This document shows positions 5,268 through 41,094 of a DNA stretch of 64,000 nucleotides, piece after piece. The first letter of the stretch is position 1. Each line of letters opens with the position of its first letter. The DNA lies in the NCBI GenBank assembly GCA_964035545.1, contig OZ037773.1, forward strand, positions 2,385,751 to 2,449,750. The letters are read 5' to 3'. The stretch comes from Bugula neritina (Eukaryota; Animalia; Bryozoa). The position numbers and the translations under genes are program-made. The notes beneath the pieces are model-generated. The model saw only the letters and a list, made by a program, of their open reading frames with translations, made no database searches and was not told the DNA's origin.

Positions 5268-6675
5268 TCATAGACTAGAATGCGAGATTTCTTCGTCCAC
5301 ATATCGACTGAGAAGTAGTTGCAGCAAAGTATTTTGTCTTTGCTTTACCTGTATAAAAAAATATTATACGTTAACAAATGGAACTGTTGTTAACGTGGGT
5401 TTTTTAATTAATTGTAGTAGCTACAGATTAGAAATAAGTTTGCTTATTTTGCAATCACAAAACAAAACTATCTTTCATAATTGTTGCCTACCTCATGAGT
5501 TGCTCGACTTTGTAACTGTGAAGCCAGTTGGGTTAATTTTGTGTCACTCAGGGTAAAACTTTCGCCAGACTCCATAGCTGCAGTCTTCAATGCCCTTAGA
5601 AGTATTTTGTCCTCAGCTCTAAAAGCATACCATCCCCATATTGCATGATTTATATTCTTCAACTTCAACAATGCATTTAAATGTAAAGTGCCACTGTAAG
5701 TACTGTGATAAAACTGTGGGTTTGAATGTAGCTAGTTGGTTTGCATGCTATAGTTATGAAGAACAGGTCGAGAAATTGAGTATAAATTACGGTAGCTTTA
5801 TTGTGTAGAATAATATAATAGGTCTGCATCCAGCGAGCTCCAGTAGTAGACTGAACTACACTGGAACTCACTGGCTTTTATATACAAGCAGAACAAAAAC
5901 ATTCCTTTGTTGCAGAAATGCCGAAATGTTTCAAATTTCAACAGAGTAAAATATCTTAGTTCTCTTCCAAAGCTCTTTTCTAGTAGCCTATAGGTTCATT
6001 TTAAGTTAGAAAGTAAGCTTCTGCACCAATATGCAATTTCAACGATTTTCAGCTTGACTATTAAAAGGGGTACTTTTTTCAGCAAAGGTATAAACAAAAC
6101 TTCAGTACAGGGCGTCAACTTTATAACATTAAGTTTATACAATAAAGGAATTACCTTGACCACGGTGCTATGACTGGTTGACTTTGGAGAGGTAAAGGTG
6201 GTGTGAGCTCCTTGGGGTCTGTACGGAGAGTAATGACCTCTGCAAATAACGTCAGAAAGTAAAGATTATGCACAGTTTACAAGTTGAAAAGAGAAGTTTA
6301 GCAGCATAGGCTGAAGAAGTGCAATCTGAAACGTGCATTTACAGGAGTACAGCCAGTCACACATTACACTTCATCGGCCAATGTTATAGAGTTGAGTTTG
6401 AGCCAACATGATACAATCTACTTGAACAAACATTGGCTTGGGTATATTACAATACAGAAAACAATTTTCTACACTCAAAACTTACCATTATTGAGAGATG
6501 AATGATGGTCTTTAGTGTCATCATCACCTTCCTCATTCAGCTGACTCGGTGGGGGATCCAAGTGACGGTAATAGGCAGGTCTCAGGCCCTTGCGAGGTCC
6601 AGTACGTCCAGACATTCGAGCTACTTTAGCTTTTCCTGCTTTCTTGGCACCTTTGTAGCTAACTTTAAGAGGCAT
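5268..6675 (-). CDS. Chimeric 4-exon gene: H2B N-tail fused to SANT/Myb-like (FLASH/GON4L C-terminal-like) domain, 160 aa
   Basis: Exons 6675-6486, 6239-6155, 5618-5492, 5348-5268; all introns GT-AG, phases 1/2/0, joined ORF open. Protein MPLKVSYKGAKKAGKAKVARMSG...PVIAPWSRAEDKILLRALKTAAMESGESFTLSDTKLTQLASQLQSRATHEVKQRQNTLLQLLLSRYVDEEISHSSL*. Confidence 0.85.
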
Positions 6676-6772
6676 GCTGTTAAGTTAGTGATAATGTTGA
6701 ATTCTCGCTCTTGATGTAATGACCGCAACAGTAGTTTGATGCTAAATGATGTTCAGATCTTAAAGCACTCTG

Positions 6773-6916
6773 CATTTATATGTATAAACAGTAGTTAGAA
6801 ATTATCCAATCAGATGGCGGTTGCGTAAGCTGACGCCTTAGTGTGCCCTAATGTTTACATTGAAACCGATTATTTGTCATCGACCAATGAAACTCGTAGA
6901 ACAATCTAATTTGCAT
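6773..6916 (-). promoter_or_regulatory. H2B-type promoter of chimeric gene copy 1
   Basis: TATAAATG (6780-6773), CCAAT at 6806 and 6884, octamer ATTTGCAT 6909-6916. Homology to the H2B upstream region extends to ~7518 (= 39841). Confidence 0.85.
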
Positions 6917-8039
6917 ATCTTATACAATATAGCCACGCCAAACTGTTGGGGAAATAGATAGGAAACTTCGAGTTGAATTCCAATAAGTTACTCTAAACTT
7001 TGAAATAATATTTTACTTTTCAACAATTATTGATATAATGTAGATTTTGACTTAAAGTTTGTATATAACATCATTATAGTGCATAGCTTATTTATTTTTA
7101 TTTAACCAGAACTTTAAACTTTTTAAAAAGTTTGGTCACTTTTATAAGGCAAAATGTGAATTATTTAATATCTCTTTCATAAAAAAAACATTACTCACTC
7201 CAAATAATCAGTATTGTGCTCACCAATCTATCCATAAGTTCACATAGTGGCACTTGTGCATTTACTCATATACAGTGTGTAAATTGCAGATAACTTCATT
7301 ACTGGTATGACTATAAAATTATCTAAATAACCATGGGAATAGCTGAACTCCTATCATTCAATACAAGCAAGGTATAGATAGGTTCTTCTTATTATTAAAT
7401 CACAGGTGTGAGAATGGCTAAGGAAACTAATATTTTTAGCCTACAAATAATAAACTATACACAGATTAAATAAATAATTAAAATAGGCTATAGCAAACTA
7501 TTTTCTGACAAAAAAATCTGTAACTCACTGATTTGGTGAAAACAGTTTGCTGTTGCAGTTACCAGGAATCCACCCAATATCAAGATGTAGTAAAACATTG
7601 GTGTAAGAGGTTTGCCACTCATTATGAGCATTACATTACTGTTGCAACTCCAAGACAATACAACCACTGGGCTAGTCTTTTTCATTGTATCAGTATAACT
7701 TCAGGAGATGCCCGCTCCTCATAAGCACACAACAGAGCTAACAGTACGCATCCACGCGCATATACATTTACTAAACTTAAACTAGATGGAGAAGATTGTT
7801 TACTCATAGCGTTAAGATATATTTTCAACTAATGGCTGGCAACAGAATTGATTTTCTTTTTAAATTCCATGTCATCTGTAGTCAAGCATGAATTCTGTAA
7901 ATAACAATGCGTTGGATAGAAATTCATGACAAAAATTGCCAGTAAATAAAGCAGACAATGTGATGGTGAGAGATATGCAAAGAGAAGGCTATGCTGCCTC
8001 TTCTTCAGATAATATTACTCGTCGAACAAATGTCATGAC

Positions 8040-9403
8040 TGACACATGCATCAAAAAACCAACAAAACCGCCAATGGCAACAATGTCACACCAAAACTTT
8101 GAACTAGATACAATGATGACCGATGACCTAATCATCAAAGGATATAGCTGTAATAAGGAGGTGAAACTTCCTAATGTGTATTCTGCAGAACAAATACCTG
8201 CCAAGTATGAGTCTATTCCACAGGCAGGTGCTCTTACCGCCTGGCCACATTTACAAGACTTAGCAAAAAACATAGTCAAGGGACAAAACATTTCAGTAAG
8301 GCTACTCATTGGAGGCAATTGCCCATTAGCCTTCAAATCCAGAGAGGTAGTAGTCGGAGACGACGCAGACGATGAACCATTTGGCGCACGTACTGACCTA
8401 GGGTGGGTTATCATGGGTAGTCTAGATACAAATAACACACATGATGACGATTCAGGCAACAAAACAACAATAGTCAATAGAACCGCGACTCATTCACCCA
8501 AGAAAGCTAAAACATCAGTATCTATCAAATGCCAAACTGAAACATCAAAACAAATGAATTAAATAATAAACTTATTGGCTCAAGATTTCAAGGAATGTGT
8601 AACAGACAAAGAAGCGGCTTCTGTAAAAGACAGAGCGTTTTTGTCTCTCATGAAACAAAAAACAAAGATCATTAATGGTCATGTCACCATGCCTTTACCT
8701 TTCAAACACAAACCACCGCTAAATAACAGTTTTAAAACAGCAAAAAACCATTTCAACTCACTGCTGATAAAGTTCTCTAAGAACCAAGACTTGGAAAACC
8801 AGTACAAAGAGTTTATGGAAGACCTCATTAGCAAGGGTAAGGCTGAAATAGTCTCACAAGACGTAGCAAGCCATGGGGACAGCACATGGTACATACCACA
8901 TTTTGAGGTATGGCATCCAAAGAAGCCAGGCAAGATTAGAGTAGTTTTTGATGGTGCTGCAAAAACAGACGGAAAGTGCCTAAACGACTATCTCATGACA
9001 GGTCCAGATCATCAAAACAGTCTCACTGGTATCCTCCTTCGCTTCCGCCAGGAACAGATTGCTGTTACATGTGAAATTGAGCGAATGTTTCACCAATTTT
9101 GTGTTGCAAAGGAACAAACAGATTATTCATGATTTTTCTGGCTAGATAAATGTGGTGAAATAGCAGTGTTCTGTATGAAAGTGCATGTGTTTGGAGCGAC
9201 ATCGTCTTCTGCGTGTGCAACATATAGCCTACATTATCTGGCTGACCAATGCAGCACAGATGATCCATCAAGTCAACAAGCCCGAAACCTTATTAGAAAT
9301 CAGTTCTATGTGGAAGACGGCTTGCTTAGTATGCCTGATGCAACATCTGCAACCAAGGTACTTACTGAGACAATCGGAATTTGCCAACAAGGTAAAGTAC
9401 AGT
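8040..9403 (+). mobile_element. BEL/Pao LTR retrotransposon pol fragment (protease linker + RT), degenerate
   Basis: IP..WPHL, LLIGGNCP, TDLGWVIMG, WYIPH..WHPKKPGKIRVVFDGAA, CLNDYLMTGPD, HVFGATSS, FYVED (YVDD mutated); stops and frameshifts. Confidence 0.9.
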
Positions 9404-10290
9404 TTGAAATCTAAGATTTCTGAAATGACACGAATTTTTAAACATGCATGTTTGAGTAGATCTGACTTGTCAGAGGATATGCTAAAATATGCTGTACACT
9501 ATGACATGTTGAAACAGGCTCAAAAGACACTTATTGGTAGTTACTATGGCAAAAATATTTTGGTACTTACTCCGCTTCTTAGGTGGTATTTATCACATGG
9601 ACTATGTGTTTCTAATATTTATCAGGTTGTTCAATTTAAACAGCATAAATGCTTTGTGGAATTTGGAGAGTCTGTATGTCAAATGAGACGTAATGCTGAC
9701 AAAGACTCTTCCATGAAAATTCTTGCTGAAACTTCGAAGTTTTACGGTAATGTAATATATGGTGCAACTATAACAAATAAAGAGCGTATTACTGATGTAA
9801 AATTTGTTTCTAATTTAAATGCTGCTCAAAAGCTTGTGAGTAGTAAACATTTTATGTCTATAGAAGAACTTGATGATGAATTTTTAAAGCTGTGGGCAAG
9901 ATACTTGTAAGGGCATTGAAGAGTGCTCCTCTAGAGTGTGGCGAAAGTTTCACCATGGGTGACAAAACATTAATCCAGCTGGCTAATTCACAGTTACAAG
10001 GTCGAGAAAGCAATTATTGCTCTGAATTCAAAAACCTATTTTTGTTTTGGAGATGAGGGTAATAAACTTAGGACAAAAGGAATAATGAAACGATGTAATG
10101 ACATAAAAAAGAACTTTTAAATGTGCTAAATAACAAATCTAGGGTGCATGGAACAATAGGGAAATTATGAGGCGCAACAACAAAGTCATGACTTATAATC
10201 AAACTAGGGCTGGTCCTAATTTTTTCTATGCTAAGCGAAAAGTACATAGTAATGGAGTTACTACTTTTCCACTCGATATGGAGATATCAT
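9404..10290 (+). mobile_element. Polinton/adintovirus pPolB fragment interrupted by SANT-exon fragment
   Basis: TPLLRWYLSHGL, RRNAD, KFYGNVIYG (motif B), C-terminal FYAKRKV..NGVTTFPLD; 9881-10006 is foreign. Confidence 0.85.
9881..10006 (+). pseudogene. Fragment paralogous to exon 3 of the H2B-SANT gene (also 61220-61345, 62735-62862)
   Basis: agggcattgaagagtgct...ggcgaaagtttcacc...cacagttacaaggtcgag matches the reverse complement of ~5500-5620. Confidence 0.88.
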
Positions 10291-10544
10291 GCTGTTATCC
10301 CAAACATTGTGTATATATTTTGATGTATAATAATGAATCGTATAGTATTATTTTTTATTTTAAATATTTTTTTGCTCTTACAATTATGGTGTTTTTACAA
10401 ATGTATGGGTGTTGGTTTTGTATGACTTACTGAAAATAAGCTACAATATAAAGCTTCATACTTTGTGTTTTAGATTAAAAATGTATATTATAATAGCACA
10501 CTTCATTCTTTTGTCATAGACAGTTTAGTATCCAATTTTTCACA

Positions 10545-12036
10545 ATGTCTCTGCGCTTTAAAAGAAACCTTTCAAAATTACAAAAGCTTCATAAGGCATC
10601 ACCTTAAAAAAAACCTTGCTTAAATCTGCTAATGGTGGTTTAATTGGTGCGCTTCGTGATTGTGCTTGCAATATAATTAGAGGAAATGTTCTTTTGAATT
10701 CAAAGCAGTTCAATTAAAAGCTCTCACTAATAAGTCGAGTGTCAAAAATAAACAAAAAGTCATTCAAAAAGATGGATTTATTGGATTGCTGTTGAAGCCT
10801 CTTGCTAAGATATTGATGGGTGGACTTTCAAGTTGACATCATAAAAAAGTATTACTTAATTGATCCATCAAAATATGAAATGCTTGAATCAGCTGCTAGT
10901 GCTGGAAATGAAAAGCGACAAAATAATTCTGACATATCTGCACATCCAAATATTAAAAATGTAAAAGATATAGATCAAAAAATGGAAGAAACAGTAAATA
11001 AATCAGATTTGACAGATTTTGAAAAGGTTGAAAAATACAATGCACTACTAGAAAAATATATCAGAAACTTTAGGAATACTCTTGAAACCTCAAAACCTGA
11101 AACAATTCTTGGTGAACCTGCTTCAAAAACTATAGACTTAGTAATACCACAGAAAACAAAAGCAACAATCAGTTTCATGCTCTTGGAGAATCACTTGACA
11201 GTATTCCTATATCATACCAACAAAAAGCTCGTAAATTGGTGAATTTTCTGAAAAATAACAACTCATTTTCTGTTAATCAAGATAACGAACTGCTTTACAA
11301 AAATCACGTATCATAAGGGGTTCAAATGTTAATCAATTAATCAATGATGCAGTACGAAACAAAAAACCAATAACAAGTAATGCATTATTTACACAGTTTG
11401 TAGAAAATTTGAATGCAGAAGGATACCCAGCTAAACAGATATTGTCCAAGAGCCATGTCAAAGACCCTCCAATAACATCTAAGATAAATCTTATTCCAAA
11501 ACTGAAAAAAGCAAGCCTCAAAGGCGTTTAGCCCCATATAAATATTCGTCTCAAACAGTAGATGACATACTGAAAAACTGGCTTTCTTAAAAATGACCAA
11601 AAAATGCAGCGGGCAGTTGTAGAGAGGTTTAACAGAACTCTTCAAACTAGATTATATCGATGGTTTACCAAAACCCAGGAGCATAACTGGACTAATGTCA
11701 TCGAACACATCGTTGATATATATAACAATACCGTCCCCTCATCAACAAAATTTTCACCAGCAAACATTTATAGGGAAAATGAAGAAGATGTTTGGCTTAA
11801 CTTGTATGGAAACTTGAAAGCGCCTAGTCTTTTGAATGCAAGGCTAAAAACTAATGACATTTTTAGAATAAGCAAGTACAAACATGTTTTCAGTAATGGA
11901 TATATAGAAAATTGGTCTATAGAAAGTTTTATTGTCAGTCAAGTTTTTTGAAACTGATCCTGTAACTTATTGTCTCAAAGATCAACAAAACGAATTAATT
12001 CATGGTTGATACTATGAAGATGAGCTGCAAAAAGTT
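10545..12036 (+). mobile_element. Polinton/adintovirus module: PW (cupiennin-like), gasderminoid-like ORF, integrase 3' half
   Basis: MSLRFKRNL..., DQKMEE..NKSDLTDFEKVEKYNALLEKY, AVVERFNRTLQTRL, RISKYKHVF.NGY..NWS.E.F, YEDELQKV. Confidence 0.85.
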
Positions 12037-12262
12037 ATGCACCCGCACAAAGATATATCTCTTAAAGCCATGAAGATCATGAATGAAAGGCATCCAGCCT
12101 AACACACTACAACAGGCTATCCACAATAACAAGCCGAGAGATACAGACTGCTGTGAAGCTCATTTTGCCGCAAGATTTGGCTAAACACGCTGTGTAGGAG
12201 GGCACAAAGGTTGTAACTAAATACACCAGCCCCAAGTAATCTTACCCAGCTCCACTAACCCC
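12037..12262 (+). pseudogene. H2B: Histone H2B C-terminal fragment + 3'UTR
   Basis: HPHKDISLKAMKIMN / [48 protein letters not shown], then cagctccactaacccc. Confidence 0.9.
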
Positions 12263-12264
12263 AT

Positions 12265-14452
12265 TGATGAAAATGATTGAGGATGGAGTAATTGTTAAAA
12301 TTGACAAACCTACTCCATGGGTGGCACACCTATGGTAGTAGTTCCTAAACTTGGCCAAAACAAGGTGAGAATTTGCACAGATTCTACCGAGGTAAACAAG
12401 CATATTTTGAGAGAGTTCCATCTCATGGCAACAGTAGATAGCAGCTTAGCTCAATTAGGACAAAGACAAATTTTTTCTAAGATCGATGCAAACAGTGGAT
12501 TTTGGCAAATTCCTTTAAGCAAAGAATCTAGCAAACTAACAACATTTCTGACTCATTCTGGACGATATCGCTATTTGCGACTGCCTCAAGGCCCATGCAG
12601 TGCTCCAGAGATTTTTGTTGCTGAAATGAACAATATTTTGAAGGATGTTGATGGTGTGGTTATACATATAGATGACATACTGGTTTTTGGTGAGAGCAAG
12701 GAGCAACATGACACAAGATTGCAAATAGTGTTGGAAAAACTTGAAGCTTCAAGCATCACGCTCAATAAAGACAAATGTAAATTTGGAGTGGCATCTGTTA
12801 ATTTTCTTGGTTATGTCATAGATCAGTCTGGTAACTTCAGTACGAAGTTTTCTTGGAATGGCCAACCAGCATGCTAAGTTTTCCGAGGAATTAGCTGCTG
12901 TGAGTGAACCAATTAGAATGCTGTTGAAGAAAGATGTTCCATGGCACTGGTCCAGCAAACAAGAAAACTCCTTCAAGACGATAAAAGAAATATTTCAAAA
13001 TGCACCATTTTTAGCAGTCTATGATGTAGACAGAGACACCATAATCACAACAGATGCTAGCAATGCAGGTCTAGGAGCAACACTCTGTCAAAATCAACAG
13101 GATGTCTCTCGGCGCTTGAAATCTCCTGCAAGTCGATCTTTAACAGTGACCGAAAAGCGTTATGCAGCCATAGAAAAAGAAAGTTTAGCAGTCTGTTGGG
13201 CTATGGGAAAGTTTTCTCCACATATACTAGGTATGACGAATGTGGTTATTGAAACTGATCACCGTCCACTAGTTACTTTGTTTGGGAATATCTTTCTAGA
13301 CAGGCTTCCACCAAGAATTCAAGGGTTTAAACTTAGACTTCAAAGATTTCAGTATACTATCAGACATGTGAGGGGGTCTAAGAATGTTGCAACTGATACT
13401 CTCTCCAGGTATAACACTGCTGAAGTAAACGAGATTGATGCAGCAAGAGAAATGGAAATTGAACTTTGTATTGATAACATCTATCAACATGGATCTAATA
13501 GTAGGTTGGAGCAGCTTCGTTTAGAACAGCATGAAGATGAAATACTGTCCAAAGTAATCAAATTAGTAGAGAATGGATGGCCAGGGTATTTGTCCACTGA
13601 AGATGTCCTTCTGAAGCCCTATTTTGAAAGAAGATCCATTTAACAATAAACAAAGGATTCTTGACACTTGGCAATCGTTTGATAATACCGTTAGCTCAAA
13701 GAGAACAGGTGTTGCAAGATTTACATAGAGGACACTTGGGCATTACAAAATGTCAAACACGGGCTAGAGATAGCGTGTGGTGGCCTTCTATGTCAAAGGC
13801 TATTGAGGCTATGATCAGCAATTGTGCTGAATGCAAAATCCATGCAGCTAAAATTACAGAGCCATTACGTCCTTCTGCAACTCCAGATAAACCTTGGCAA
13901 CACCTTAGCACTGATTTGTTGTTTTATAACGGCCAAGTATATCTTCTGGTTATTGATATTTATTCAAGGTAACCTGAACTTGCCTTGCTGGGAAACTCTG
14001 ACTTTTCTTCAAGTAAAGTAATAACACACCTAAAATCTATTTTTCCACGACATGGCATACCTGAAATACTATTGTCAGATAACGGCCATCAATATGCAAG
14101 TGCAGAATTTAAACATTTTTCTGTCGAGTATGGATTTACCCATGTGACTAGCAGCCCACATTATCACAGAGCGAATGGAGCAGCTGAGCGAGGAGTAAGG
14201 ACCATCAAAAGCATGCTTGCAAAAGAGAAAGATCCTTATTTGCCTTTGTTAGCCTATAGATCCTCACCGCAGTATAGCTCATACTCTCCAACAGAATTGT
14301 TAATGGGTAGAAAATTGAGATCCACTGTACCCATCCATCCGGATAAGCTTAAACCTGAACTCCCTGACCATGACTTATTCAAAAAGAGCAACAATCAGTA
14401 TAAAGAGAAAATGGAAGAAAATCATGACAAAAATCCTAAAGTGCGCCCTCTT
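12265..14452 (+). mobile_element. Ty3/Gypsy pol fragment (RT, RNase H, integrase), degenerate
   Basis: FSKIDANSGFWQIPL, HIDDILV, TDASNAGLGA, EKESLAV, ETDHRPL, LHRGHLGITKC, SDNG, ANGAAERGVRTIK; frameshifts and stops; no LTRs. Confidence 0.92.
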
Positions 14453-15107
14453 GGGAGGTGAAACTTCCTAATGCGTATTCTGCAGAACAAATATCAGCCA
14501 AGTATGAGTCTATTCCACAGGCAGGTGCTCTTACCGCCTGGCCACATTTACAAGACTTAGCAAAAAACATAGTCAAGGGACAAGACATTTAAGTAGGGCT
14601 ACTCATTGGAGGCAATTGCCCATTAGCCTTCAAACCTAGCGAGGTACTAATCGGAAACGACGCAGACGATGAACCATTTGGCCTAGGGTGGGTTATCATG
14701 GGTAGTCTAGATACAAATAACACACATGATGACAATTCAGGCAACAAAACAACAATAGTCAATAAAACCGTAACTCATTCACTCAAGAAAGCTAAAACAT
14801 CAGTATCTTTCAAATGCCAAACTGAAACATCAAAACAAATAAATAAAATAATTAATTTATTGGCTCAAGATTTCAAGGAATGTGTAACAGACAAAGAAGC
14901 GGCTTCTGTAGAAGACAGAGCATTTTTGTCTCATGAAACAAAAAACAAAGATCGTGGATGATCATGTCACCATGCCTTTACCTTACAAACACAAACCACC
15001 ACTAGATAACAGTTTTAAAACAGCAAAAAACCATTTCAACTCACTGCTGAGAAAGTTCTCTAAGAACCAAGACTTGGAAAACCAGTACAAAGAGTTTATG
15101 GAAGACT
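14453..15107 (+). mobile_element. BEL/Pao fragment (copy of ~8157-8823)
   Basis: Near-identical to the first BEL fragment, ending at gagtttatggaagac. Confidence 0.9.
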
Positions 15108-15239
15108 AAAAACCCCATGTTGACAACAGTTACATTTGTTAACGTATAGTATTTTTTTATGCAGATAAAGCAAAGACAAAATACTTTGCTGCAACTAATT
15201 TTTAGTGCATATTTGGAAGAAGAAGTCATCAGTGCTTGA
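15108..15239 (+). pseudogene. Intron-3 end + exon-4 paralogue of the H2B-SANT gene (also 23038-23170, 59946-60077)
   Basis: aacagttacatttgttaacgtata...atgcag|ataaagcaaagacaaaatactttgctgcaacta encodes IKQRQNTLLQLIFSAYLEEEVISA*. Confidence 0.88.
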
Positions 15240-15322
15240 AAATAATGGGACCTACTGACTTGGGTAAAAATAATATATATTTTAGTAATACTACCATGCA
15301 TGTATATAACATAAAGACAGGG

Positions 15323-17663
15323 ATGGAGTTATTACTTTTCCACTCGATATGTAGATATCGTGCCGTTATCCCAAATATTGTGTATATATTTTGATGTATA
15401 ACAATGAATCATATATTATTATTTTTTATTTTTAAATATTTTTTGCTCTTACAATTATGGTGTTTTTACAAATGTATGGGTGTTGGTTTTGTATAACTTA
15501 CTAAAAATAAACTAAAATATAAAACTACATACCTGGTCTTATAGGTTAAAAATGTATGTTATAATAGCACACTTCTTTCCTTTGTCATAGACAGTATAGT
15601 ATCCAATTTTTCACAATGTCTCTGCGCTTTAAAAGAAATCTTTCGAACTTACAAAAGCTTTATAGGGCATCACCTCAAAAAAAGAAAACCTTGCTTAAAT
15701 CGGCTAATGGTGATTTAATTGGTGCACTTTGTGATTGTGCTTGCAATATAATTAGAGGAAATGTTCTTTTGAATTCAAAGCAGTTCAATAATCTTAGGAT
15801 GCATCATTAAGTAATTAAAAGCTCTCACTAATAAGTCAAGTGTCAAAAATGAACAAAAAATCATTCAAAAAGGCGGATTTATTAGATTGCTGTTGAAGCC
15901 TCTTGCTAAGATCTTGATGGGTGGACTTTTAAGTTGACATCATAAAAAAGTATGACTTAATTGATCCATCATAATATGAAATGCTTAAATCAGCTGCTAG
16001 TGCTGGAAATGAAAAGCGACAAAATAGTTCTGACATGTCTGCGCATCCAAATATTAAAAATGTAAAAGATATAGATCAAAAAATGGAAGAAACACTAAAT
16101 AAATCAGATTTGACAGATTTTGAAAAGGTTGAAAAATACAATGCACTACTAGAGAAATATATCAGAAACTTTAGGAATGCTCTTGAAACCTCAAAACCTG
16201 AAACAATCCTTGGTGAACCTGCTTCAAAAACTATAGACTTAAATAATACCACAGAAAACAAAAGCAATAATCAGTTTCAATCTCTTGAAGAATCACTTGA
16301 CAGTATTCCTATATCATGCCGCCAAAAAGCTCGTAAATTGGTGAATTTCTTGAAAAACAACAACTCATTTTCTGTTAATCAAGACAAGGAACTGCTTTAA
16401 GAAAATCACGTATTAAGAGGTTCAAATGTTAATCAATTAATCAATTAATCAATGATGCAGTACAAAACAAAAAACCAATAACAAGCAATGCATTATCTAC
16501 ACAGTTTGTAGAAAATTTGAAAGCAGAAGGATACCCAGCTAAACAGATATTGTCCAAGAGCCATGTCCAAAACCCTTCAATAACATCTAAGATAAATCTT
16601 ATTCCAAAACTGACAGAAGCAAGCCTCAAAGGCGTTTAGCCCCATATAAATATTCGTCTCAAACAGTAGATGACATACTGAAAAACTGGCTTTTTTAAAA
16701 ATGACCAAAAAATGCAAAGCCAAAACCCCTAGCACATTGGACAATTCTTATTTCAATCCACGAGAAGTTGGAAGCTTAGGTGGAAAGTGTGGATTTTCCA
16801 AACGTTTGGCTCAGAATTCTGAGCCAATGGATATAAATATAAATCTAGAACAATTTCAAAATGGTTGCAATCTCAAGAAGCTTATACTCTTCGCAAGCCT
16901 GTTAGGCAAAAACTTATTCGAATATCTACATTAGCTAATGGAATAAATGATCAGTTCCAAGCTGATCTGATTGACATGCAAAAACATAAAAATTCAAATT
17001 CTAATCATGGTTATATCCTAACTGTTGTAAATGTGTTTTCAAAGTTTTCATAGGCTAAGCCGTTAAAGTCAAAATCTGGACAAGAGGTCGCTCGAAAATT
17101 GAAAGACATATTTACTTTACGCAAATGTAGGGTGCTGCAAACAGACAAAGGAAAAGAACTTTATAATACAAAGGTCAAGACTTCATTAACAAAGTTTGAT
17201 ATATTACACTTTCCATCGGAAAATGACGACATAAAGGAGGCAGTTGTAGAGAGGTTTAATAGAACTCTTCAAACTAGATTATATCGATGGTTTCCCAAAA
17301 CCCAGGAGCATAACTGGACTAATGTCATCGAACACATTGTTGATTTATATAACAATACCGTCCCCTCATCAACAAAATTTTTACCAGCAAACACTTATAG
17401 GGAAAACGAAGAAGATGTTTGGCTTAATTTGTATGGAAACTTGAAAGCGCCTAGTCTTTTGAATGCAAGGCTAAAAACTAATGACATTTTTAGAATAAGC
17501 AAGTGCAAACATGTTTTCAGTAATGGATATATAGAAAATTGGTCTATAGAAAGTTTTATTGTCAGTCAAGTTTTTTGAAACTGATCCTGTAACTTATTGT
17601 TTCAAAGATCAACAAAACGAATTAATTCATGGTTGGTACTATGAAGATGAGCTGCAAAAAGTT
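15323..17663 (+). mobile_element. Polinton/adintovirus module: pPolB end, PW, gasderminoid-like ORF, near full-length integrase (degenerate)
   Basis: YFNP..GSLGG, QSQEAYTLRKPVR, DQFQADLIDM, LQTDKGKE, VVERFNRTL. Confidence 0.88.
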
Positions 17664-17906
17664 ATGCACCCGCACAAAGAAATATCTGTTAAAGCCATGA
17701 AGATCATGAATGAAAAGCATCCAGCCTAACACACTACAACAGGCTATCCACCATAACAAGCCAAGAGATACAGACTGCTGTGAAGCTAGTTTTGCCAAAA
17801 GATTTGGCTAAACACGCTGTGTAGGAGGGCGCACAAAGGTTGTAACTAAATACACCATCCCCAAGTAATCTTACCCAGCTCCACTAACCCCGCTGGGCCT
17901 TTTCAG
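17664..17906 (+). pseudogene. H2B: H2B C-terminal fragment ending in a half stem-loop
   Basis: Copy of the 12037 fragment; ends GGGCCTTTTCAG at 17895-17906. Confidence 0.88.
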
Positions 17907-18439
17907 TAAATTGAATTTAGTTGTCAAAACTATATGTCTGTTTTGTTATTTGATATTCAATCATGTTTTATAGCACATAATGAATCATTGACTATTTAAT
18001 ATTTTAAATTCATTTATTTATTTGCGATTGTATTGTAACACCCTATAAGACTTACCAGATCAGTATTATGGCATAGTTTGTTTTAAATTTCAAAATAGAG
18101 AGCTGTTTGTCAACTTAAAATAGCTAAAATAATGTTAATAATCATTTCTTATAGTTTGGTTTATGCATGAAAGTTTTAATATTTATTACTTGAAGAGTTG
18201 TTTTTAGCTTTCTATTACTGGCTACAGTACAAAGCCTATAGTTAGTAGTGAAACCTATTTTTCAATTTTCTGCACCTTTTATTGCTAGACTAAGTTACAA
18301 AGTATTGTGACGGGCGTTACAGAATTATAGACTGCACATACATGCTGGACTTCGCAAGGAAAGAAAGAAGTATTAAATTCATTCCCCAAATCTGTTTACA
18401 AACCAGGGATGATAGTTAACAAAGCATGATAAAATTTAA

Positions 18440-19007
18440 TTTTTAATTAAAAGAAACCACGCAATGGAGTGTATCAGAACTAAATTTAAAAGTTCTTGAC
18501 ATCATAAATTTTATAGCTCCATGGTTTTCATGTGCAAATTTTATCAAAGCATACAATTGTAGTATGAAGAAAGGCTTTTGCCCACATGAATATGTCATAT
18601 CATTAGAAAAGCTCAATGAAAATCCTCTGCCTGCACATGAAGCTTTCTACAGTAGTCTAATTCAATCAAATATCACAGCAGCAGACTATCAGAATTGTAA
18701 ACAGGTTTGGCAAAACAAAAACATGCTCACAATGAAAGATTATTTGATTTGTTACAACATTCCTGATGTATTACCATTTTAGAGGCAGTTGAAAAACAAC
18801 GCATGGTTTATCGTGAAAAAGGCATTGATATATACAAGGATGGAATTAGTGTTCCATCTTTAGCTACTAAACGGTTATTTAATGAATCAAAGACTAAAAA
18901 CTTTTCTATTCCGTTGATTGGTAGAAAAAATGCATACTTGTATAAAACTATACGGAATAATATTATTAGGGGTCCAAGTATTGTTTTCCACAGGTATCAT
19001 GAAGCTG
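18440..19007 (+). mobile_element. Polinton pPolB exonuclease-region fragment (also 20365-20943)
   Basis: DIINFIAP, KGFFPYEY, LPAHEAFYSSL, YL.CYN.PDV, IIRGPSIVFHRYHEA. Confidence 0.88.
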
Positions 19008-19010
19008 ACA

Positions 19011-19075
19011 AACAGCATGCTACATAAAAACAGCTCAAAAGGTGCCAAAAAAGACAAGAAAGAAAGGAGAAAAAA
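19011..19075 (+). pseudogene. H2B: H2B start/N-tail fragment
   Basis: aacagcATG...agctcaaaaggtgccaaaaaag resembles aacagcATG...agctccaaaggtgccaagaaag at 40688. Confidence 0.7.
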
Positions 19076-19079
19076 ACTT

Positions 19080-19845
19080 TTAGATTAAAAATGTATATTA
19101 TAATTGCACACTTCATTCCTTTGTCATAGACAGTTAAGTATCCAATTTTTCACAATGACTCTGCACTTTAAAAGAAACCTTTCAAAATTACAAAAGCTTC
19201 ATAGGGCATCACCTCAAAAAAAGAAAACCTTGCTTAAATCTGCTAATGGTGATTTAATTGGTGCACTTTGTGATTGTGCTTGCAATATAATTAGAGGAGA
19301 TGTTCTTTTGACTTCAAAGCAGTTCAATAATCTTAGGATGCATCATTAAGTAATTAAAAGCTCTCACTAATAAGTCGAGTGTCAAAAATAAACAAAAAAT
19401 CATTCAAAAAGGTGGATTTATTGGATTGCTGTTGAAGCCTCTTGCTAAGATCTTGATGGGTGGACATTTTCCAAACGTTTGGCTCAGAATGGGTATAAAT
19501 ATAAATCTAGAACAATTTCAAAATGGTTGCAATCTCAAGAAGCTTATACTCCTCGCAAGCCTGTTAGGCAAAAATTTATTCGAAGATCTACACTAGTTAA
19601 TGGAATAAATGATCAGTTCCAAGCTGATCTGATTGACATGCAAAAACATAAAAATTCAAATTCTAATCATGGTTATATCCTAACTGTTGTAGATGTGTTT
19701 TCAAAGTTTTCATGGGCTAAGCCGTTAAAGTCAAAATCTGGACACGAGGTAGATCAAAAATTGAAAGAAATATTTGCTTTACGCAAACGTAGGGTGCTGC
19801 AAACAAACAAAGGAAAAGAATTTTAAAAATACAAAAGTCAAGACA
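19080..19845 (+). mobile_element. Polinton PW fused to integrase 5' half
   Basis: ORFs 19104 and 19479; the gasderminoid-like ORF is deleted at ggtggac|attttccaaacg. Confidence 0.85.
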
Positions 19846-20945
19846 GTAAATTGAATTTAGTTGTCAAAACTATATGTCTGTTTTGTTATTTGATATTCAA
19901 TCATGTTTTATGGCACATAATATATCATTGACTATTTAATATTTTAAATTAATTATTTATTTGCGATTGTATTGTAACACCCTATAAGACTTACAAGATC
20001 AGTATTATGGCGTAGTTTGTTTTAAATTTCAAAATAGAGAGCTGTTTGTCAACTTAAAATAGCTAAAAAAATGTTAATAATCATTTCCTATAGTTTGGTC
20101 TATGGAAGTTTTAATATTCATTACTCGAAGAGTTGTTTTTGGCTTTCTATTACTGACCATGCAGTACAAAGCCTAGTTAATAGTGAAATTTATCTTTCAA
20201 TTTTCTGCACTTTTTATTGCTAGACCAAGTTACAAAGTATTGTGACAGGTGTTACAGAATAGACTGCACATACATGCTGGACTTCGCAGAGAAAGAAAGA
20301 AGTATTAAATTCATTCCCCAAATCTGTTTACAAACCAGGGATGATAGTTAACAAAGCATGATAAAATTCAATTTGTGATTAAAAGAAGCAACACAATGAA
20401 GTGTATCAGAACTAAACATTTAAGATTTTTTGACATCATAAATTTTATAGCTCCATGGTTTTCATGTGCAAATTTTATCAAAGCATACAATTGTAGTATG
20501 AAGAAAGGCTTTTTCCCATATGAATATGTCATATCATTAGAAAAGCTCAAGGAAAATTCTCTGCCTGCACATGAAGCTTTCTACAGTAGTCTAACTCAAT
20601 CAAATATCACAGCAGCAGACTATCAGAATTGTAAACAGGTTTGGCAAAACAAAAACATGCTCACAATGAAAGATTATTTGATTTGTTACAACAATCCCGA
20701 TGTATTATCATTTTTAGAGGCAGTTGAAAAACAAAGCATGGTTTATCGTGAAAAAGGCATTGATATGTTCAAGGATGAAATTAGTGTTCCATCTTTAGCT
20801 ACTAAACGGTTATTTAATGAATCAAATACTAAAAACTTTTTTATTTCGTTGATTGGCAGAAAAGATGCAGACTTGTATAAAACTATACAGAATAATATCA
20901 TTAGGGGTCCAAGTCCTGTTCTCTACAGGTAACATGAAGCTGACA

Positions 20946-21063
20946 AACAGTATGCTACAGAAAAATAACTCGAAAGGTGCCAAAAAAGACCAGAAAAAAA
21001 GGAGAAAAAAACCGAAACCGTACACAGCGCTTACCTTTAAAACATTCTAAAAAAAGTCCACCT
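20946..21063 (+). pseudogene. H2B: H2B N-terminal fragment
   Basis: MLQKNNSKGAKKDQKKRRKK, then after a frameshift SAYL*NILKKVH (cf. SIYIYKVLKQVH); joins PW at cacctca. Confidence 0.78.
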
Positions 21064-22342
21064 CAGAAAAAAGAAAACCTTGCTTACATCAGCTAATGGC
21101 GATTTAATTGGTGCACTTTGTGATTGTGCTTGCAATATAATTAGAGAAAATGTTCTTTTGATTTCAAAGCAGTTCAATAATCTTAGGATGCATCATAAAC
21201 AATTAAAAGCTCTCACTAATAAGTCGAGTGTCAAAAATAAACAAAAAATCATTCAAAAAGGTGGATTTATTGGATTGCTGTTGAAGCCTCTTGCTAAGAT
21301 CTTGATGGGTGGACTTTTAAGTTGACATCATAAAAAAGTATTACTTAATTGATCCATCAAAATATGAAATGCTTAAATCAGCTGCTAGTGCTGGAAATGA
21401 AAAGCGACAAAATAGTTCTGACATGTCTGCGCATCCAAATATTAAAAATGTAAAAGATATAGATCAAAAAATGGAAGAAACACTAAATAAATCAGATTTG
21501 ACAGATTTTGAAAAGGTTGAAAAATACAATGCACTACTAGAGAAATATATCAGAAACTTTAGGAATGCTCTTGAAACCTCAAAACCTGAAACAATCCTTG
21601 GTGAACCTGCTTCAAAAACTATAGACTTAGTAATACCACAGAAAACAAAAGCAATAATCAGTTTCAATCTCTTGAAGAATCACTTGACAGTATTTCTATA
21701 TCATACCGTCAAAAAGCTCGTTAATTGGTGAATTTCTTGAAAAACAACAACTCATTTTCTGTTAATCAAGATAACAAACTGCTTTACAAAAATCAAGTAA
21801 TAAGAGGCTCAAATGTTAATCAATTAATCAATTAATCAATGATGCAGTACAAAACAAAAAACCAATAACAAGCAACGCATTAATTACACAGTTTGTAGAA
21901 AATTTGAATGCAGAAGGATACCCAGCTTAACAGATATTGTCCAAGAGCCATGTCCAAAACCCTCCAATAACATCTAACATAAATCTTATTCCAAAACTAA
22001 AAAAAGCAAACCTCAAAGGCGTTTAGCCCTATATAAATATTCGTCTCAAACAGTAGATGACATACTGAAAAACTGGCTTTCCTAAAAAGGACCAAAAAAT
22101 GCAAAGCCAAAACCCCTAGCACATTGAACAATTTTTATTTCAATCCACAAGAAGTTGGAAGCTTAGGTGGAAAACGTGTATTTTCGAAACGTTTGGCTCA
22201 GAATGGATATAAATATAAATCTAGAACAATTTCAAAATGGTTGCAATCTCAAGAAGCTTATACTCTCCGCAAGCCTGTTAGGCAAAAATTTATTCGAAGA
22301 TCTACATTAGCTAATGGAATAAATGATCAGTTCCAAGCTGAC
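21059..22342 (+). mobile_element. Polinton PW, gasderminoid-like ORF, integrase N-terminus
   Basis: PW ends QKGGFIGLLLKPLAKILMGGLLS (GG|F protease-site-like motif plus amphipathic helix). Confidence 0.85.
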
Positions 22343-23037
22343 CTAATCATCAAAGGATATAGCTGTAATAAGGAGGTGAAACTTCCTAATTCGTATTCTG
22401 CAGAACAAATATCAGCCAAGTATGAGTCTATTCCACAGGCAGGTGCTCTTACCGCCTGGCCACATTTACAAGACTTGACAAAAAACATAGTCAAGGGACA
22501 AAACATTTCAGTAGGGCTACTCATTGGAGGCAATTGCCCATTAGCCTTCAAACCTAGCGAGGTACTAGTCGGAAATGACACAGACGATGAACCATTTGGC
22601 GTACGTACTGGCCTAGGGTGGGTTATCATGGGTAGTCTAAATACAAATAACACACAAGATGACAATTCAGGCAACAAAACAACAATAGTCAATAAAACCG
22701 TGACTCATTCACCCAAGAAAGCTAAAACATCAGTATCTTTCAAATGCCAAACTGAAACATCAAAACAAATAAATAAAATAATAAATTTATTGGCTCAAGA
22801 TTTCAAGGAATGTGTAACAGACAAGGAAGCCGCTTCTGTAGAAGACAGAGCATTTTTGTCTCTCATGAAACAAAAAACAAAGATCATTGATGATCATGTC
22901 ACCATGCCTTTACCTTACAAACACAAACCACCGCTAGATAACAGTTTTAAAACAGCAAAAAACCGTTTCAACTCACTGCTGAGAAAGTTCTCTGAGTCCA
23001 AGACTTGGAAAACCAGTACAAAGAGTTTATGGAAGAC
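22340..23037 (+). mobile_element. BEL/Pao fragment fused in frame to Polinton integrase
   Basis: ORF 22124-23080 reads DQFQADL|IIKGYSCNKEVKLP. Confidence 0.88.
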
Positions 23038-23252
23038 TAAAAACCCCATGTTGACAACAGTTACATTTGTTAACGTATAGTATTTTTTTATGCAGATAAA
23101 GCAAAGACAAAATACTTTGCTGCAACTAATTTTTAGTGCATATTTGGAAGAAGAAGTCACCAGTGCTTGAAAATAATGGGACCTACTGACTTGGGTAAAA
23201 ATAATATATATTTTAGTAATACTACCATGCATGTATATAACATAAAGACAGG

Positions 23253-24571
23253 GATGGAGTTACTACTTTTCCACTCGATATGTAGATATCTTGCTGTCAT
23301 CCCAAATATTGTGTATATATTTTGATGTATAACAATGAATCATATATTATTATTTTTTATTTTTAAATATTTTTTGCTCTTACAATTATGGTGTTTTTAC
23401 AAATGTATGGGTGTTGGTTTTGTAAAACTTACTAAAAATAAACTAAAATATAAAACTTCATACCTGGTCTTATAGGTTAAAAATGCATGTTATAATTGCA
23501 CACTTCTTTCCTTTGTCATAGACAGTTTAGTATCCAATTTTTCACAATGTCTCTGCGCTTTAAAAGAAATCTTTCAAACTTACAAAAGCTTTATAGGGCA
23601 TCACCTCAAAAAAAGAAAACCTTGCTTAAATCTGCTAATGGTGATTTAATTGGTGCACTTTGTGATTGTGCTTGCAATATAATTAGAGGAAATGTTCTTT
23701 TGAATTCAAAGCAGTTCAATAATCTTAGGATGCATCATTAAGTAATTAAAAGCTCTCACTAATAAGTCGAGTGTCAAAAATGAACAAAAAATCATTCAAA
23801 AAGGAGGATTTATTAGATTGCTGTTGAAGCCTCTTGCTAAGATCTTGATGGGTGGACTTTTAAATTGACATCATGAAAAAGTATTACTTAATTGGTCCAT
23901 CAAAATATGAAATGCTTAAATCAGCTGCTAGTGCTGGAAATAAAAAGCGACAAAATAATTCTGACATGTCTGCGCATCCAAATATTAAAAATGTAAAAGA
24001 TTTAGATCAAAAAATGGAAGAAACACTAAATAAATCAGATTTGACAGATTTTGAAAAGGTTGAAAAATACAATGCACTACTAGAGAAATATATCAGAAAC
24101 TTCAGGAATGCTCTTGAAACCGCAAAACCTGAAGCAATCATTGGTGAACCTGCTTCAAAAACTCCAGACTTAAATAATACCACAGAAAACAAAAGCAATA
24201 ATCAGTTTCAATCCCTTGAAGAATCACTTGACAGTATTCCTACATCATACCAACACAAAGCTAGTAAATTGTTGAATTTCTTGAAAAACAACAACTCATT
24301 TTTTGTTAATCAAGATAACGAACTCATTACAAAAATCAGGTATTAAGAGGCTCAAATGTTAATCAAGTAATCAATAAATCAATGATGCAGTACGAAACAA
24401 AAAACCAATAACAAGCAATGCATTATCTACACGGTTTGTAGAAAATTTGAATGCAAAGGATACCCAGCTAAACAGATATTGTCCAAGAGCCTTGCCAAAA
24501 CCCTCCAATAACATCTAAGATAAATCTTATTCCAAAACTGAAAAAGGCAAGCCTCAAAGGCGTTTAGCCCC

Positions 24572-24580
<9 letters not shown>
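23253..24580 (+). mobile_element. Polinton pPolB end, PW, gasderminoid-like ORF
   Basis: Copy of 15323-16650; truncated by the (TA)n tract. Confidence 0.85.
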
Positions 24581-25267
<687 letters not shown>

Positions 25268-35714: not shown

Positions 35715-35761
<47 letters not shown>

Positions 35762-39176: not shown

Positions 39177-40448
39177 TTGTTTACTTAGTAGGCTATATGC
39201 ATGTTACCAACTGTTGCTAGACATCAAGCTACCTAGCCTGCTGCATAATAATTATAATACTTTTAATATCTAGGCTATTTCTACAATGATACATGGCTAT
39301 GCTAAAACTTCTTTTGTATAAAACTAGCAGAATAATACTACAATAATAACAATGATAATGATAATGCTTTTTCATGTTTATAAATACATGGCACACCTGT
39401 CTAAAGCATACATGTTATAAATTCCTCAATAGAATCACAGAATGAAAATGCTTCATCAAGTAGGAAACAACAACATCAACTTCACACTGAGCTGTATAAA
39501 GAAATGTTTGAAATACAATTTATTAAACTCTGTGTGTATAATTGCTATTTAATTTTAATTACTGAAATATTAGGTTTGAGAGTTGGAGCCAAAATTTAAA
39601 GAAGGCTAATTAAAAAGACAGTATAACCTACATCAAATTGAAATTGCCTAAACATCTCCAAAATTTTATTCCTCAAATTACTCCAAGTTGTTGATTTTGC
39701 TCCCTACAAGTAGTTTATATAATATAAAGATTTTATAGCACAAATACTGAACACATGTATAATTAATGCTTTCATGAACATATGCATTTTGCACCTAGCT
39801 CCTTTGACCTGAACAATTATAGCTTTTTCCAAAAATATTCTTTTTTTGTCAGAAAATAGTTTGTTTATATAGCCTATTTTAATTATTTGCTTAATATGTG
39901 TATATTCACATATTGTAGTATTTGTAGGCTAACAATATTAATTGTCCTTAGGCCATTCTCACACCTGTGATTTCTTGATAAAAAAATATCCAGGCTGTGC
40001 ATCAAGAAGAACCTATCTATACCTTGAATGGTAGGAGTTCAGCTCTTCCTATGTACTTGGTAATTAAGGTAGGTTACCTGCAATTTACACACTGTATATG
40101 AGTAAATGCACAAGTGCCACTATGTGAACTTATTGATAGATTGGTGCCCACAATTATGATTATTTGGAGTGCGTAATGTTTTTTTTTGAAAGAAATATTT
40201 AATAATTCTCATTTTGCCTTACAAAAGTGACCAAACTTTTTAAAAAGTTTAAAGTTCTGGTTAAATAAAAATAAATAAGCTATGCACTAATGATGTTATA
40301 TACAAAGTTAGGTCAAAATCTACATTATATCAATAATTGTTGAAAAGTACAATATTATTTTGAAGTTTAAAGTAATTTCTTGGAATTCAACTCAAAGTTG
40401 CCTATACCAATTTCCCCAACAGTTTGACGTGGCTATATTGTATAAGAT

Positions 40449-40592
40449 ATGCAAATTAGATTGTTCTCCGAGTTTCATTGGTCTATGACAAATAATTGTT
40501 TTCAATGTAAACATTAGGGCACACTAAGGCGTCAGTTTACATAACCGCCATCTGATTGGATAATTTCTAACTACTGTTGATACATATAAATA
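40449..40592 (+). promoter_or_regulatory. H2B promoter
   Basis: Octamer ATGCAAAT 40449-56, ATTGG at 40477 and 40555, TATAAATA at 40585. Confidence 0.85.
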
Positions 40593-40692
40593 CAGAGTGC
40601 CCTAAGATCTGAACATCATTTAGCATCAAACTACTGTTGCAGCCACTACATCGAGAACAAGCATTCAACATTAATATCACTAACTGAACAGC

Positions 40693-41067: not shown

Positions 41068-41094
41068 TCTCCAAGCTCCATCACTAACCCCAAC

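What the first reader, a model, noticed from the sequence alone, without database searches (positions are those of the whole stretch)
8040..24580. 16.5-kb fully co-oriented patchwork of TE, viral and histone-related fragments behind the chimeric gene's promoter
Seen: about 20 consecutive fragments from BEL/Pao, Gypsy, Polinton/adintovirus, H2B and the SANT gene, all sense on +. I saw no LTRs, TIRs or TSDs, so this is not ordinary nested insertion. It starts ~1.1 kb upstream of and divergent from the H2B-type promoter, and a related array sits at the same place in copy 2. Known: uni-strand piRNA clusters show strand-biased TE fragments, and histone H2A/H2B promoters are often bidirectional. Inference: a small-RNA source locus or sequence trap that would target both parasites and the H2B/SANT family, or a template-switch-built capture array. 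Internal duplication reduces the number of independent orientation events.
Basis: partly seen in the sequence, partly recalled or inferred. Interest (0 to 1): 0.85.

Follow-up and report, generated by a model that had tools for sequence, protein, structure and literature searches.

The report
Tandemly amplified composite transposon remnant
The 16.5-kb "patchwork" is about five head-to-tail, differently deleted copies of one composite unit built on a Polinton-like DNA element, so its uniform orientation is mostly inherited by duplication and is not evidence for a dedicated small-RNA trap.

Summary
From about 7936 to 24571, every recognisable coding fragment is sense on the + strand, and there are no LTRs, TIRs or inverted repeats.

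The roughly 20 fragments are not independent. 83% of the array has another copy in the window. The blocks follow one cyclic order:
- BEL-like piece
- short host-like filler
- polymerase (pPolB) C-part
- ORF1
- ORF2
- rve integrase
- H2B-like piece
- pPolB N-part

This order repeats about five times, with different deletions in each unit (P=0.0008 against random order). The pPolB, ORF1, ORF2 and integrase pieces belong to one Polinton/Maverick-like element whose genes already point the same way. Only 4-5 orientation events are independent (p about 0.03-0.06).

"Copy 2" is the same array carried by a segmental duplication. The one independent H2B locus in the window has no array. Transcription from the divergent H2B promoter would give sense, not antisense, transposon RNA.

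Best reading: a locally amplified, decaying composite repeat with short fillers at its junctions. Small-RNA production is possible but untested. The host looks bryozoan. The BEL/Pao and SANT labels were not confirmed by any tool. Interest is modest.

The parts
7936..9399 (+). Unit 1: longest copy of the LTR-retroelement-like protease/RT-start fragment ('BEL-like'). It is truncated at both ends and has 2 in-frame stops.
   Evidence: ORFs lie in one frame. There is no Pfam hit. The BEL/Pao label rests on recollection only.
9399..12262 (+). Unit 1: Polinton-like stretch holding the pPolB C-part, ORF1, ORF2, the integrase C-part and an H2B-like tail. The genes are broken (counts are in the report).
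   Evidence: tblastn with pPolB and integrase relatives; blastn self-matches.
9860..10185 (+). A 326-bp repeated segment carrying the SANT-like piece, which is about 82% identical to chimeric-gene positions 5500-5624 on the opposite strand. It also occurs at 61200-61525 and 62717-63043.
   Evidence: The SANT domain itself was not confirmed.
12013..12262 (+). H2B-like fragment of unit 1 (histone-fold part), in the position of the integrase chromodomain.
   Evidence: tblastn E down to 3e-20, 74-78% aa identity to invertebrate H2Bs.
12262..14454 (+). Gypsy-like RT-RNaseH-integrase fragment, single copy, without LTRs. It is truncated at both ends and has 2 frame changes and 1 stop.
   Evidence: Pfam RVT_1 1e-27, RT_RNaseH_2 7e-26, Integrase_H2C2 5e-16, rve 2e-7.
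14454..15106 (+). Unit 2: BEL-like fragment (short form).
   Evidence: 93-97% identical to the other copies.
15107..15308 (+). Filler whose first 121 bp are about 87% identical to chimeric-gene positions 5286-5406 on the opposite strand. The same junction occurs in unit 5 and in copy 2.
15323..19077 (+). Unit 2: the most complete Polinton-like stretch. It holds the end of pPolB, ORF1, ORF2, the integrase without its chromodomain, the H2B-like piece and the pPolB N-part.
17640..17906 (+). H2B-like fragment of unit 2. It is in frame with the integrase tail and ends inside the histone 3' stem-loop.
19077..21059 (+). Unit 3: Polinton-like stretch with internal deletions (ORF1 part, integrase N/core part, pPolB N-part).
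21059..22347 (+). Unit 4: ORF1 part, ORF2 and the integrase N-terminal quarter. It is joined in frame to the next BEL-like piece.
22339..23239 (+). Unit 5: BEL-like fragment (no stop in its frame) plus the same filler as in unit 2.
23254..24571 (+). Unit 5: end of pPolB, ORF1 and part of ORF2, cut off by the microsatellite.
24572..25267 (.). (AT)n-type microsatellite that forms the right border of the array.
59007..63043 (+). Copy-2 array, about 1.2 units: BEL-like piece, filler, long pPolB C-part (383-aa ORF), ORF1, ORF2, then a repeated polymerase-end segment. It was carried there by the segmental duplication.
6475..7516 (-). H2B-type start codon region and upstream sequence of the chimeric gene. 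This stretch is shared by all three H2B-type loci.
39841..41418 (+). Independent H2B locus: an intact 124-aa H2B variant (40693-41067) with a stem-loop (41090-41135). It has no array beside it.

Best explanation
The array is a locally amplified, decaying composite repeat.

Inferred history:
1. A Polinton/Maverick-like element with gene order pPolB, ORF1, ORF2, rve integrase lay next to the H2B-derived gene.
2. An LTR-retroelement-like (BEL-like) sequence came to lie inside its polymerase gene in the same orientation, and was then truncated.
3. Three rearrangement junctions acquired short fillers: an H2B-like piece where the integrase chromodomain should be, and two pieces resembling the neighbouring chimeric gene.
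4. The resulting unit of about 6.9 kb was duplicated head to tail. It expanded to about five units by unequal exchange or replication slippage, with unit-specific deletions and exchange between units.
5. A Gypsy-like pol fragment landed between units 1 and 2.
6. A segmental duplication copied the first 1.2 units to the second locus.

Co-orientation therefore follows from the native gene order of one element plus direct duplication. No function is required. As young transposon sequence it may well be silenced by small RNAs, or feed them.

Shown here: the block structure, the colinearity, the orientation and the copy identities. Inferred: the order of events and the mechanism of amplification.
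For: - Self-blastn shows every block repeated in direct orientation at 90-99% identity. 83% of the array has another copy in the window.
- The blocks follow one cyclic order. The mean forward skip is 1554 nt against 3450 nt expected at random, over 10 distinct transitions, P=0.0008.
- On 15 polymerase relatives, the N-part ends and the C-part begins within about 25 residues of each other. In copy 2 the BEL-like piece plus filler sits directly before the C-part.
- The polymerase end runs straight into ORF1.
- The integrase matches relatives up to just before their chromodomain. Of 65 relatives, 65 have rve, 43 have Chromo and none has a histone domain.
- The same lesions in the integrase and in the H2B-like piece occur in both units that keep them, so the genes were broken before amplification.
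- Identity between units is mosaic, for example 98.8% against 93.9% for the same pair in adjacent segments. This is typical of exchange within arrays.
- Measurable junctions share 0-3 nt, so they are neither transposon integration nor homologous recombination.
- Transposon tandems that expand into arrays are documented (PMC5932611).
Against: - No junction from the pPolB N-part into the BEL-like piece survives, so the split of the polymerase by the BEL-like insertion is inferred from coordinates only.
- The first unit of copy 2 combines a left part most like unit 1 with a junction shared with units 2 and 5. This needs an extra exchange event.
- Five co-oriented foreign pieces (BEL-like, Gypsy-like, H2B-like, two gene-like fillers) still show a mild excess that duplication does not explain.
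- The unit length and some cyclic coordinates are approximate.
- The rest of the genome could not be examined, so a dispersed mobile composite family is not excluded.
Confidence: 0.7

Rival explanations
1. The array is a uni-strand small-RNA (piRNA-type) source locus, possibly also producing RNAs against the H2B/SANT-like gene family. This does not exclude the tandem-array origin.
For: - All transposon pieces share one strand.
- In oyster, Polinton and BEL sequences are 32-fold and 5-fold enriched in piRNA clusters (PMC6128900).
- The units carry H2B-like and chimeric-gene-like pieces, which recalls tandem loci that silence a related gene family (Su(Ste), from my own knowledge).
Against: - The diversity is low: one composite amplified, not many independent trapped insertions.
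- Transcription from the proposed divergent H2B promoter would be sense to the transposon genes (orientation). Cluster transcripts carry transposons antisense.
- The independent H2B locus has no array.
- There is no strand asymmetry of poly(A) hexamers, 42 against 37.
- The host-like pieces are only 76-88% identical to the local genes.
Confidence: 0.25
2. The patchwork was built at the RNA level. A reverse transcriptase switched between co-packaged transposon and host mRNAs, and the chimeric cDNA was then integrated and amplified.
For: - Every piece is sense.
- The H2B-like piece ends inside the stem-loop, within about 10 nt of a histone mRNA 3' end, and is in frame with the integrase tail.
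- One integrase-to-BEL-like junction is also in frame.
Against: - The blocks include several genes with their intergenic spacers in native order.
- One gene-like filler spans what reads as an intron-exon boundary of the chimeric gene.
- There are no LTRs, poly(A) tail or target duplication.
- Only 2 of 3 checked junctions are in frame, which is close to chance.
- Junction overlaps of 0-3 nt do not discriminate.
Confidence: 0.1
3. Chance aggregation: ordinary independent insertions and deletions in a transposon-rich spot that happen to share a strand.
For: After de-duplication only 4-5 orientation events remain, p about 0.03-0.06. That is unremarkable across a whole-genome scan.
Against: Shared junctions, direct repeats covering 77% of the array and the non-random cyclic order show duplication, not independent insertion.
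Confidence: 0.05
4. Assembly artefact: reads from dispersed copies of these elements were chained into a false array.
For: The region is repeat-rich and the junctions cannot be verified without reads.
Against: The units differ by 1-7% and carry unit-specific deletions and unique junctions. The first part is reproduced in the segmental duplicate with the same junctions.
Confidence: 0.05

Closest known systems
Transposon tandem dimers that expand into arrays (hobo, Bari1 and R1 arrays in Drosophila; PMC5932611)
   Same: Head-to-tail copies of a transposon-derived unit, expanded and homogenised by exchange, with heterogeneity between units.
   Different: Here the tandem junction is not end to end. 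It lies inside the integrase gene and upstream of or within the polymerase gene, and it carries an H2B-like filler. The unit is a composite of several element classes. Only about five units are present.
Polinton/Maverick elements (pPolB plus rve integrase, often with a chromodomain)
   Same: Polymerase fragments whose relatives carry PF03175, and an rve integrase whose relatives mostly carry a chromodomain.
   Different: There are no TIRs, no target duplication and no capsid, ATPase or protease genes in the window. The chromodomain is replaced by an H2B-like piece, and all genes are broken.
Uni-strand piRNA clusters such as flamenco (own knowledge), and mollusc clusters rich in Polinton and BEL (PMC6128900)
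   Same: A strand-uniform block of transposon fragments next to a promoter-bearing gene.
   Different: The diversity of independent insertions is low. The orientation is sense relative to the proposed promoter. No small-RNA data exist.
Su(Ste)-type tandem loci that silence a paralogous gene family (own knowledge)
   Same: Tandem units that combine transposon sequence with pieces homologous to nearby host genes.
   Different: The host-like pieces are short (120-270 bp) and 12-24% diverged. Antisense transcription is unknown.
Replication-based rearrangements with templated insertions (FoSTeS/MMBIR, polymerase-theta repair; own knowledge)
   Same: Short fillers at breakpoints, two of them from one 340-bp donor stretch, and 0-3 nt junction overlaps.
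   Different: The donors are only 76-88% identical to the local candidates, so the true donors and the timing are unknown.

Membership tests
Uni-strand piRNA cluster | Transposon fragments strongly biased to one strand | tested here: met
Uni-strand piRNA cluster | Many independent insertions of diverse families (a trap record) | tested here: not met
   One composite unit was amplified. There are 4-5 independent events, and 83% of the array is repeated.
Uni-strand piRNA cluster | Fragments antisense to transcription from a defined promoter | tested here: inconclusive
   With the proposed H2B-type promoter the fragments would be sense. No other promoter could be assessed from sequence.
Uni-strand piRNA cluster | Abundant 24-32-nt, 1U-biased small RNAs from one strand | not testable with these tools
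Polinton/Maverick (or adintovirus) | Protein-primed family B polymerase | tested here: met
   Weak Pfam DNA_pol_B_2 hit. The relatives of the 383-aa ORF carry PF03175, with E down to 3e-94. Only fragments are present.
Polinton/Maverick (or adintovirus) | Retrovirus-type rve integrase | tested here: met
Polinton/Maverick (or adintovirus) | Capsid, packaging ATPase and maturation protease genes | tested here: not met
   No such Pfam family appears among + or - ORFs of the array. ORF1 and ORF2 have no hits.
Polinton/Maverick (or adintovirus) | Terminal inverted repeats and target-site duplication | tested here: not met
   There is no inverted match inside or around the array.
Transposon-derived tandem array | Direct, head-to-tail repetition of a colinear unit | tested here: met
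Transposon-derived tandem array | Junction formed by complete element ends (double insertion) | tested here: not met
   The junction lies within genes and carries an H2B-like filler.
Nested LTR-retrotransposon insertions | Paired LTRs and target duplications around each insert | tested here: not met
   The 2.2-kb direct repeat pair is made of coding unit sequence, not LTRs. The Gypsy-like and BEL-like pieces are internal fragments only.
BEL/Pao retrotransposon (label of the 'A' pieces) | Match to BEL/Pao-specific protein families | tested here: inconclusive
   There is no Pfam hit even at E<=5.
Helitron or Pack-type gene-capturing transposon | Rep/helicase gene or defined termini flanking captured pieces | tested here: not met
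   No such domain was found and there are no TIRs. Helitron termini were not searched for.

The most novel reading that the evidence does not exclude
The tandem array is transcribed on the minus strand in the germline and yields small RNAs antisense to Polinton-like, BEL-like and Gypsy-like genes and also to H2B-type and SANT-like host transcripts. That would make it a Su(Ste)-like regulator of the neighbouring H2B-derived chimeric genes in a bryozoan. A second, less likely reading is that the ancestral element used an integrase whose chromodomain had been swapped for an H2B histone-fold piece as a chromatin tether.
Probability: 0.07. Interest if true: 0.7.

Novelty: new member of a known kind. 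Interest (0 to 1): 0.3.

Why it matters
The main lesson is methodological. Counts of co-oriented fragments must be collapsed by shared junctions and native gene order before they are read as a piRNA-cluster signature. Here about 20 fragments become 4-5 events.

Biologically, the locus gives a documented case, in a little-studied phylum, of a Polinton-like element remnant turning into a small tandem array. It also shows host histone-like sequence sitting exactly where the integrase chromodomain should be.

If small RNAs do arise from it, it would be a tractable locus for studying how tandem transposon composites become small-RNA sources.

Tried and rejected
Searches that gave nothing useful:
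- Exact look-ups of the H2B variant, the receptor gene and ORF2 found nothing on record.
- The H2B homology search was uninformative about the host. Mammalian entries in that list were not used.
- PDB sequence searches with polymerase pieces, the downstream RT ORF and the SANT-like ORF found nothing.
- Pfam gave nothing for the BEL-like ORFs, ORF1, ORF2 or the SANT-like ORFs.

Tests that did not discriminate:
- Junction microhomology is only 0-3 nt.
- Poly(A)-signal hexamers show no strand asymmetry.

Readings rejected:
- The 2.2-kb direct repeat (95.8%) as an LTR pair. It consists of unit coding sequence.
- 'pPolB C-piece, SANT piece and small-ORF block' as three captures. They are one colinear polymerase-to-ORF1 stretch with a small foreign replacement inside it.
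- The SANT-like piece as part of the polymerase. It has no similarity to polymerase relatives.
- A divergent H2A partner at the promoter. No candidate ORF exists there.

Full report
CONTEXT. The window is AT-rich (about 33% G+C) and is not human. An intronless rhodopsin-type receptor gene (599-1534, duplicated at 47185-48120) has its only named relatives in the bryozoan Bugula neritina, at 44-71% identity. The host is therefore probably a bryozoan whose proteins are not in the searched collections.

A segmental duplication relates 1-8823 to 46601-59945 and 9399-11366 to 60739-62710, at 94-97% identity.

The window holds three H2B-type loci:
- Two chimeric copies on the minus strand. They keep the H2B 5' region and a degenerate 3' stem-loop around a 1.35-kb foreign insert.
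- One intact 124-aa H2B variant at 40693-41067 (+), with an Rfam Histone3 stem-loop.

OBSERVATION. Between about 7936 and the (AT)n tract at 24572-25267, all recognisable coding sequence is sense on +. The evidence:
- Pfam hits on + ORFs.
- No Pfam hit for 38 minus-strand ORFs.
- tblastn hits of polymerase and integrase relatives on + only.
- H2B-like pieces on +.
- Two pieces similar to the minus-strand chimeric gene, lying inverted to it.
- 28 against 7 long open frames, and a constant A-excess on +.
- No inverted self-match in the array.

The co-orientation and the lack of LTRs and TIRs are therefore real.

WHAT THE FRAGMENTS ARE. The Gypsy-like piece (12262-14454) is a solid RT-RNaseH-integrase fragment.

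The polymerase label is supported. The 383-aa ORF of copy 2 finds relatives at E down to 3e-94, several of which carry PF03175. These relatives also match the array's other polymerase pieces.

The integrase has 4356 relatives, mostly about 360 aa long. Of 65 near-full-length ones, all have rve and 43 have a C-terminal chromodomain.

The BEL/Pao label of the protease/RT-start pieces and the SANT label of the gene-derived piece received no tool support. I keep both only as "-like".

No capsid, ATPase or protease gene was found. "Polinton/Maverick-like" is therefore as far as the evidence goes, and "adintovirus" is not supported.

THE KEY RESULT. The polymerase relatives show that the supposed separate fragments "polymerase C-piece, SANT piece, small-ORF block" form one colinear stretch. 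The polymerase runs to its end and directly into ORF1, ORF2 and the integrase. A short foreign replacement sits inside the polymerase C-part.

The N-terminal polymerase piece found after the integrase ends within about 25 residues of where the C-terminal piece begins, on 15 relatives. In copy 2 the BEL-like piece and a 120-bp gene-like filler sit directly before that C-terminal piece.

All blocks thus fit one cyclic composite unit of about 6.9 kb: BEL-like piece, filler, pPolB C-part, ORF1, ORF2, integrase, H2B-like piece, pPolB N-part. The array reads as about five such units (4.6 unit lengths), each with its own deletions. The single-copy Gypsy-like fragment lies between units 1 and 2.

Forward skips between consecutive blocks average 1554 nt, against 3450 nt expected for random order (P=0.0008). 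76.5% of the array is repeated within it, and 82.8% within the window. Copies are 93-99% identical, with mosaic relationships that point to exchange between units.

STATE OF THE GENES (counts only).
- Polymerase: no complete copy. Units 1 and copy 2 hold C-parts, each with one frame change and the foreign replacement; copy 2 also has 1-2 stops. Units 2 and 3 hold N-parts; unit 2 has one frame change and at most one stop, and unit 3 has one stop. Units 2 and 5 keep only the very end.
- Integrase: four pieces.
  - Unit 2 is nearly whole but lacks the chromodomain, with one frame change and one stop.
  - Unit 1 keeps the C-part with the same frame change and one stop.
  - Unit 3 keeps the N/core part.
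  - Unit 4 keeps the first quarter.
- Internal deletions in the Polinton-like stretches: one in unit 1, two in unit 3.
- BEL-like pieces: all are truncated at both ends. The longest has two stops and unit 5's copy has none. Unit 2's copy and copy 2's copy have frameshifts and several stops.
- Gypsy-like piece: truncated at both ends, with two frame changes and one stop.
- H2B-like piece: one internal deletion with a frame change, shared by both copies.

The shared lesions show that the genes were already broken when the unit was amplified.

JUNCTIONS AND FILLERS. Where both parental sequences are available, junctions share 0-3 nt. They therefore arose neither by element integration nor by homologous recombination.

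Three junctions carry short foreign sequence:
- The H2B-like piece (about 270 bp) replaces the integrase chromodomain and is in frame with the integrase tail. It resembles ordinary invertebrate H2Bs (74-78% aa) more than the local variant (66%). In unit 2 it ends inside the histone stem-loop.
- Two pieces of about 120-130 bp resemble one 340-bp stretch of the neighbouring chimeric gene at 82-88% identity. One of them spans what reads as an intron-exon boundary.

This pattern fits templated fillers at rearrangement breakpoints.

HOW MUCH IS LEFT TO EXPLAIN. Relative to the Polinton-like backbone, the independent orientation events are the BEL-like piece, the Gypsy-like piece, the H2B-like piece and one or two gene-like fillers. 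These 4-5 events all being sense gives p of about 0.03-0.06, which is suggestive but weak for a scan.

SMALL-RNA READING. It cannot be tested here.

In its favour:
- The array is strand-uniform.
- In oyster, Polinton and BEL sequences are strongly enriched in piRNA clusters (PMC6128900).

Against the specific proposal:
- The locus lacks the diversity of a trap.
- The independent H2B locus has no array.
- No divergent partner gene marks a bidirectional histone promoter.
- Rightward transcription from that promoter would be sense to the transposon genes, whereas cluster transcripts carry them antisense.
- Poly(A) hexamers show no strand asymmetry.

I put small-RNA production at about 0.25, and the promoter-driven, H2B/SANT-targeting version at well under 0.1.

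VERDICT. This is a real feature, correctly seen but over-counted. It is best explained as a tandemly amplified, decaying composite built on one Polinton-like element (confidence about 0.7). It is a new member of a known kind, namely transposon-derived tandem arrays (PMC5932611). Interest is modest (0.3).

STEPS LEFT OUT AND SLIPS.
- I did not look up or fetch public contigs that encode relatives of the integrase or polymerase. The native gene order and termini of the element family therefore rest on this window alone.
Every protein query ended at a stop or frame change.

Noticed in passing
38204-39176 and 41227-42178 (around 39841-41418): The intact H2B variant gene, with its promoter and stem-loop, lies between inverted repeats of about 1 kb that are 93-97% identical. 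This looks like a foldback or TIR-bounded structure carrying a histone gene.
   Followed up: partly
49299-53016: A G+C-rich (about 58% against 33% background) Gypsy-like element is present only in copy 2 of the segmental duplication. It has 289-bp direct terminal repeats (49317-49605 and 52727-53015, 98.6% identical) and an open 655-aa protease-RT-RNaseH frame. It inserted after the duplication, and its composition is foreign to the locus.
   Followed up: partly
5258-6607 (-) and 56360-57715 (-): In the chimeric genes, most of the H2B coding sequence is replaced by a 1.35-kb insert, while the H2B 5' region and a degenerate 3' stem-loop are kept. The insert has no long open frame, and its SANT-like reading got no Pfam or PDB support.
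   Followed up: partly
3401-3481 (-), 53714-53875 (-), 49702-49797 (-): Further short H2B-like remnants lie downstream of the chimeric genes. The region may be a decayed histone gene cluster.
   Followed up: no
25270-26486 (+): An open frame with a weak RVT_1 match sits directly after the (AT)n tract, also sense on +. It extends the co-oriented run by one more, unclassified, retroelement piece.
   Followed up: partly
31842-37001 (+): Exons of a purple-acid-phosphatase-like host gene (Pur_ac_phosph_N, Metallophos_C) lie between the array and the third H2B locus.
   Followed up: no
43000-44400: A block of short-period tandem repeats (8-12 bp and 25 bp) with strong GC skew. It is related to the repeat tract at 24500-25300.
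   Followed up: no
53594-53665 (+): A borderline tRNA match (29.1 bits against a gathering score of 29).
   Followed up: no
60099-61250 (+): The polymerase C-part ORF and some of its relatives carry a weak Vsr-type endonuclease signature, and one relative is named as such by its source. This may be an endonuclease-like module inside this polymerase lineage.
   Followed up: no
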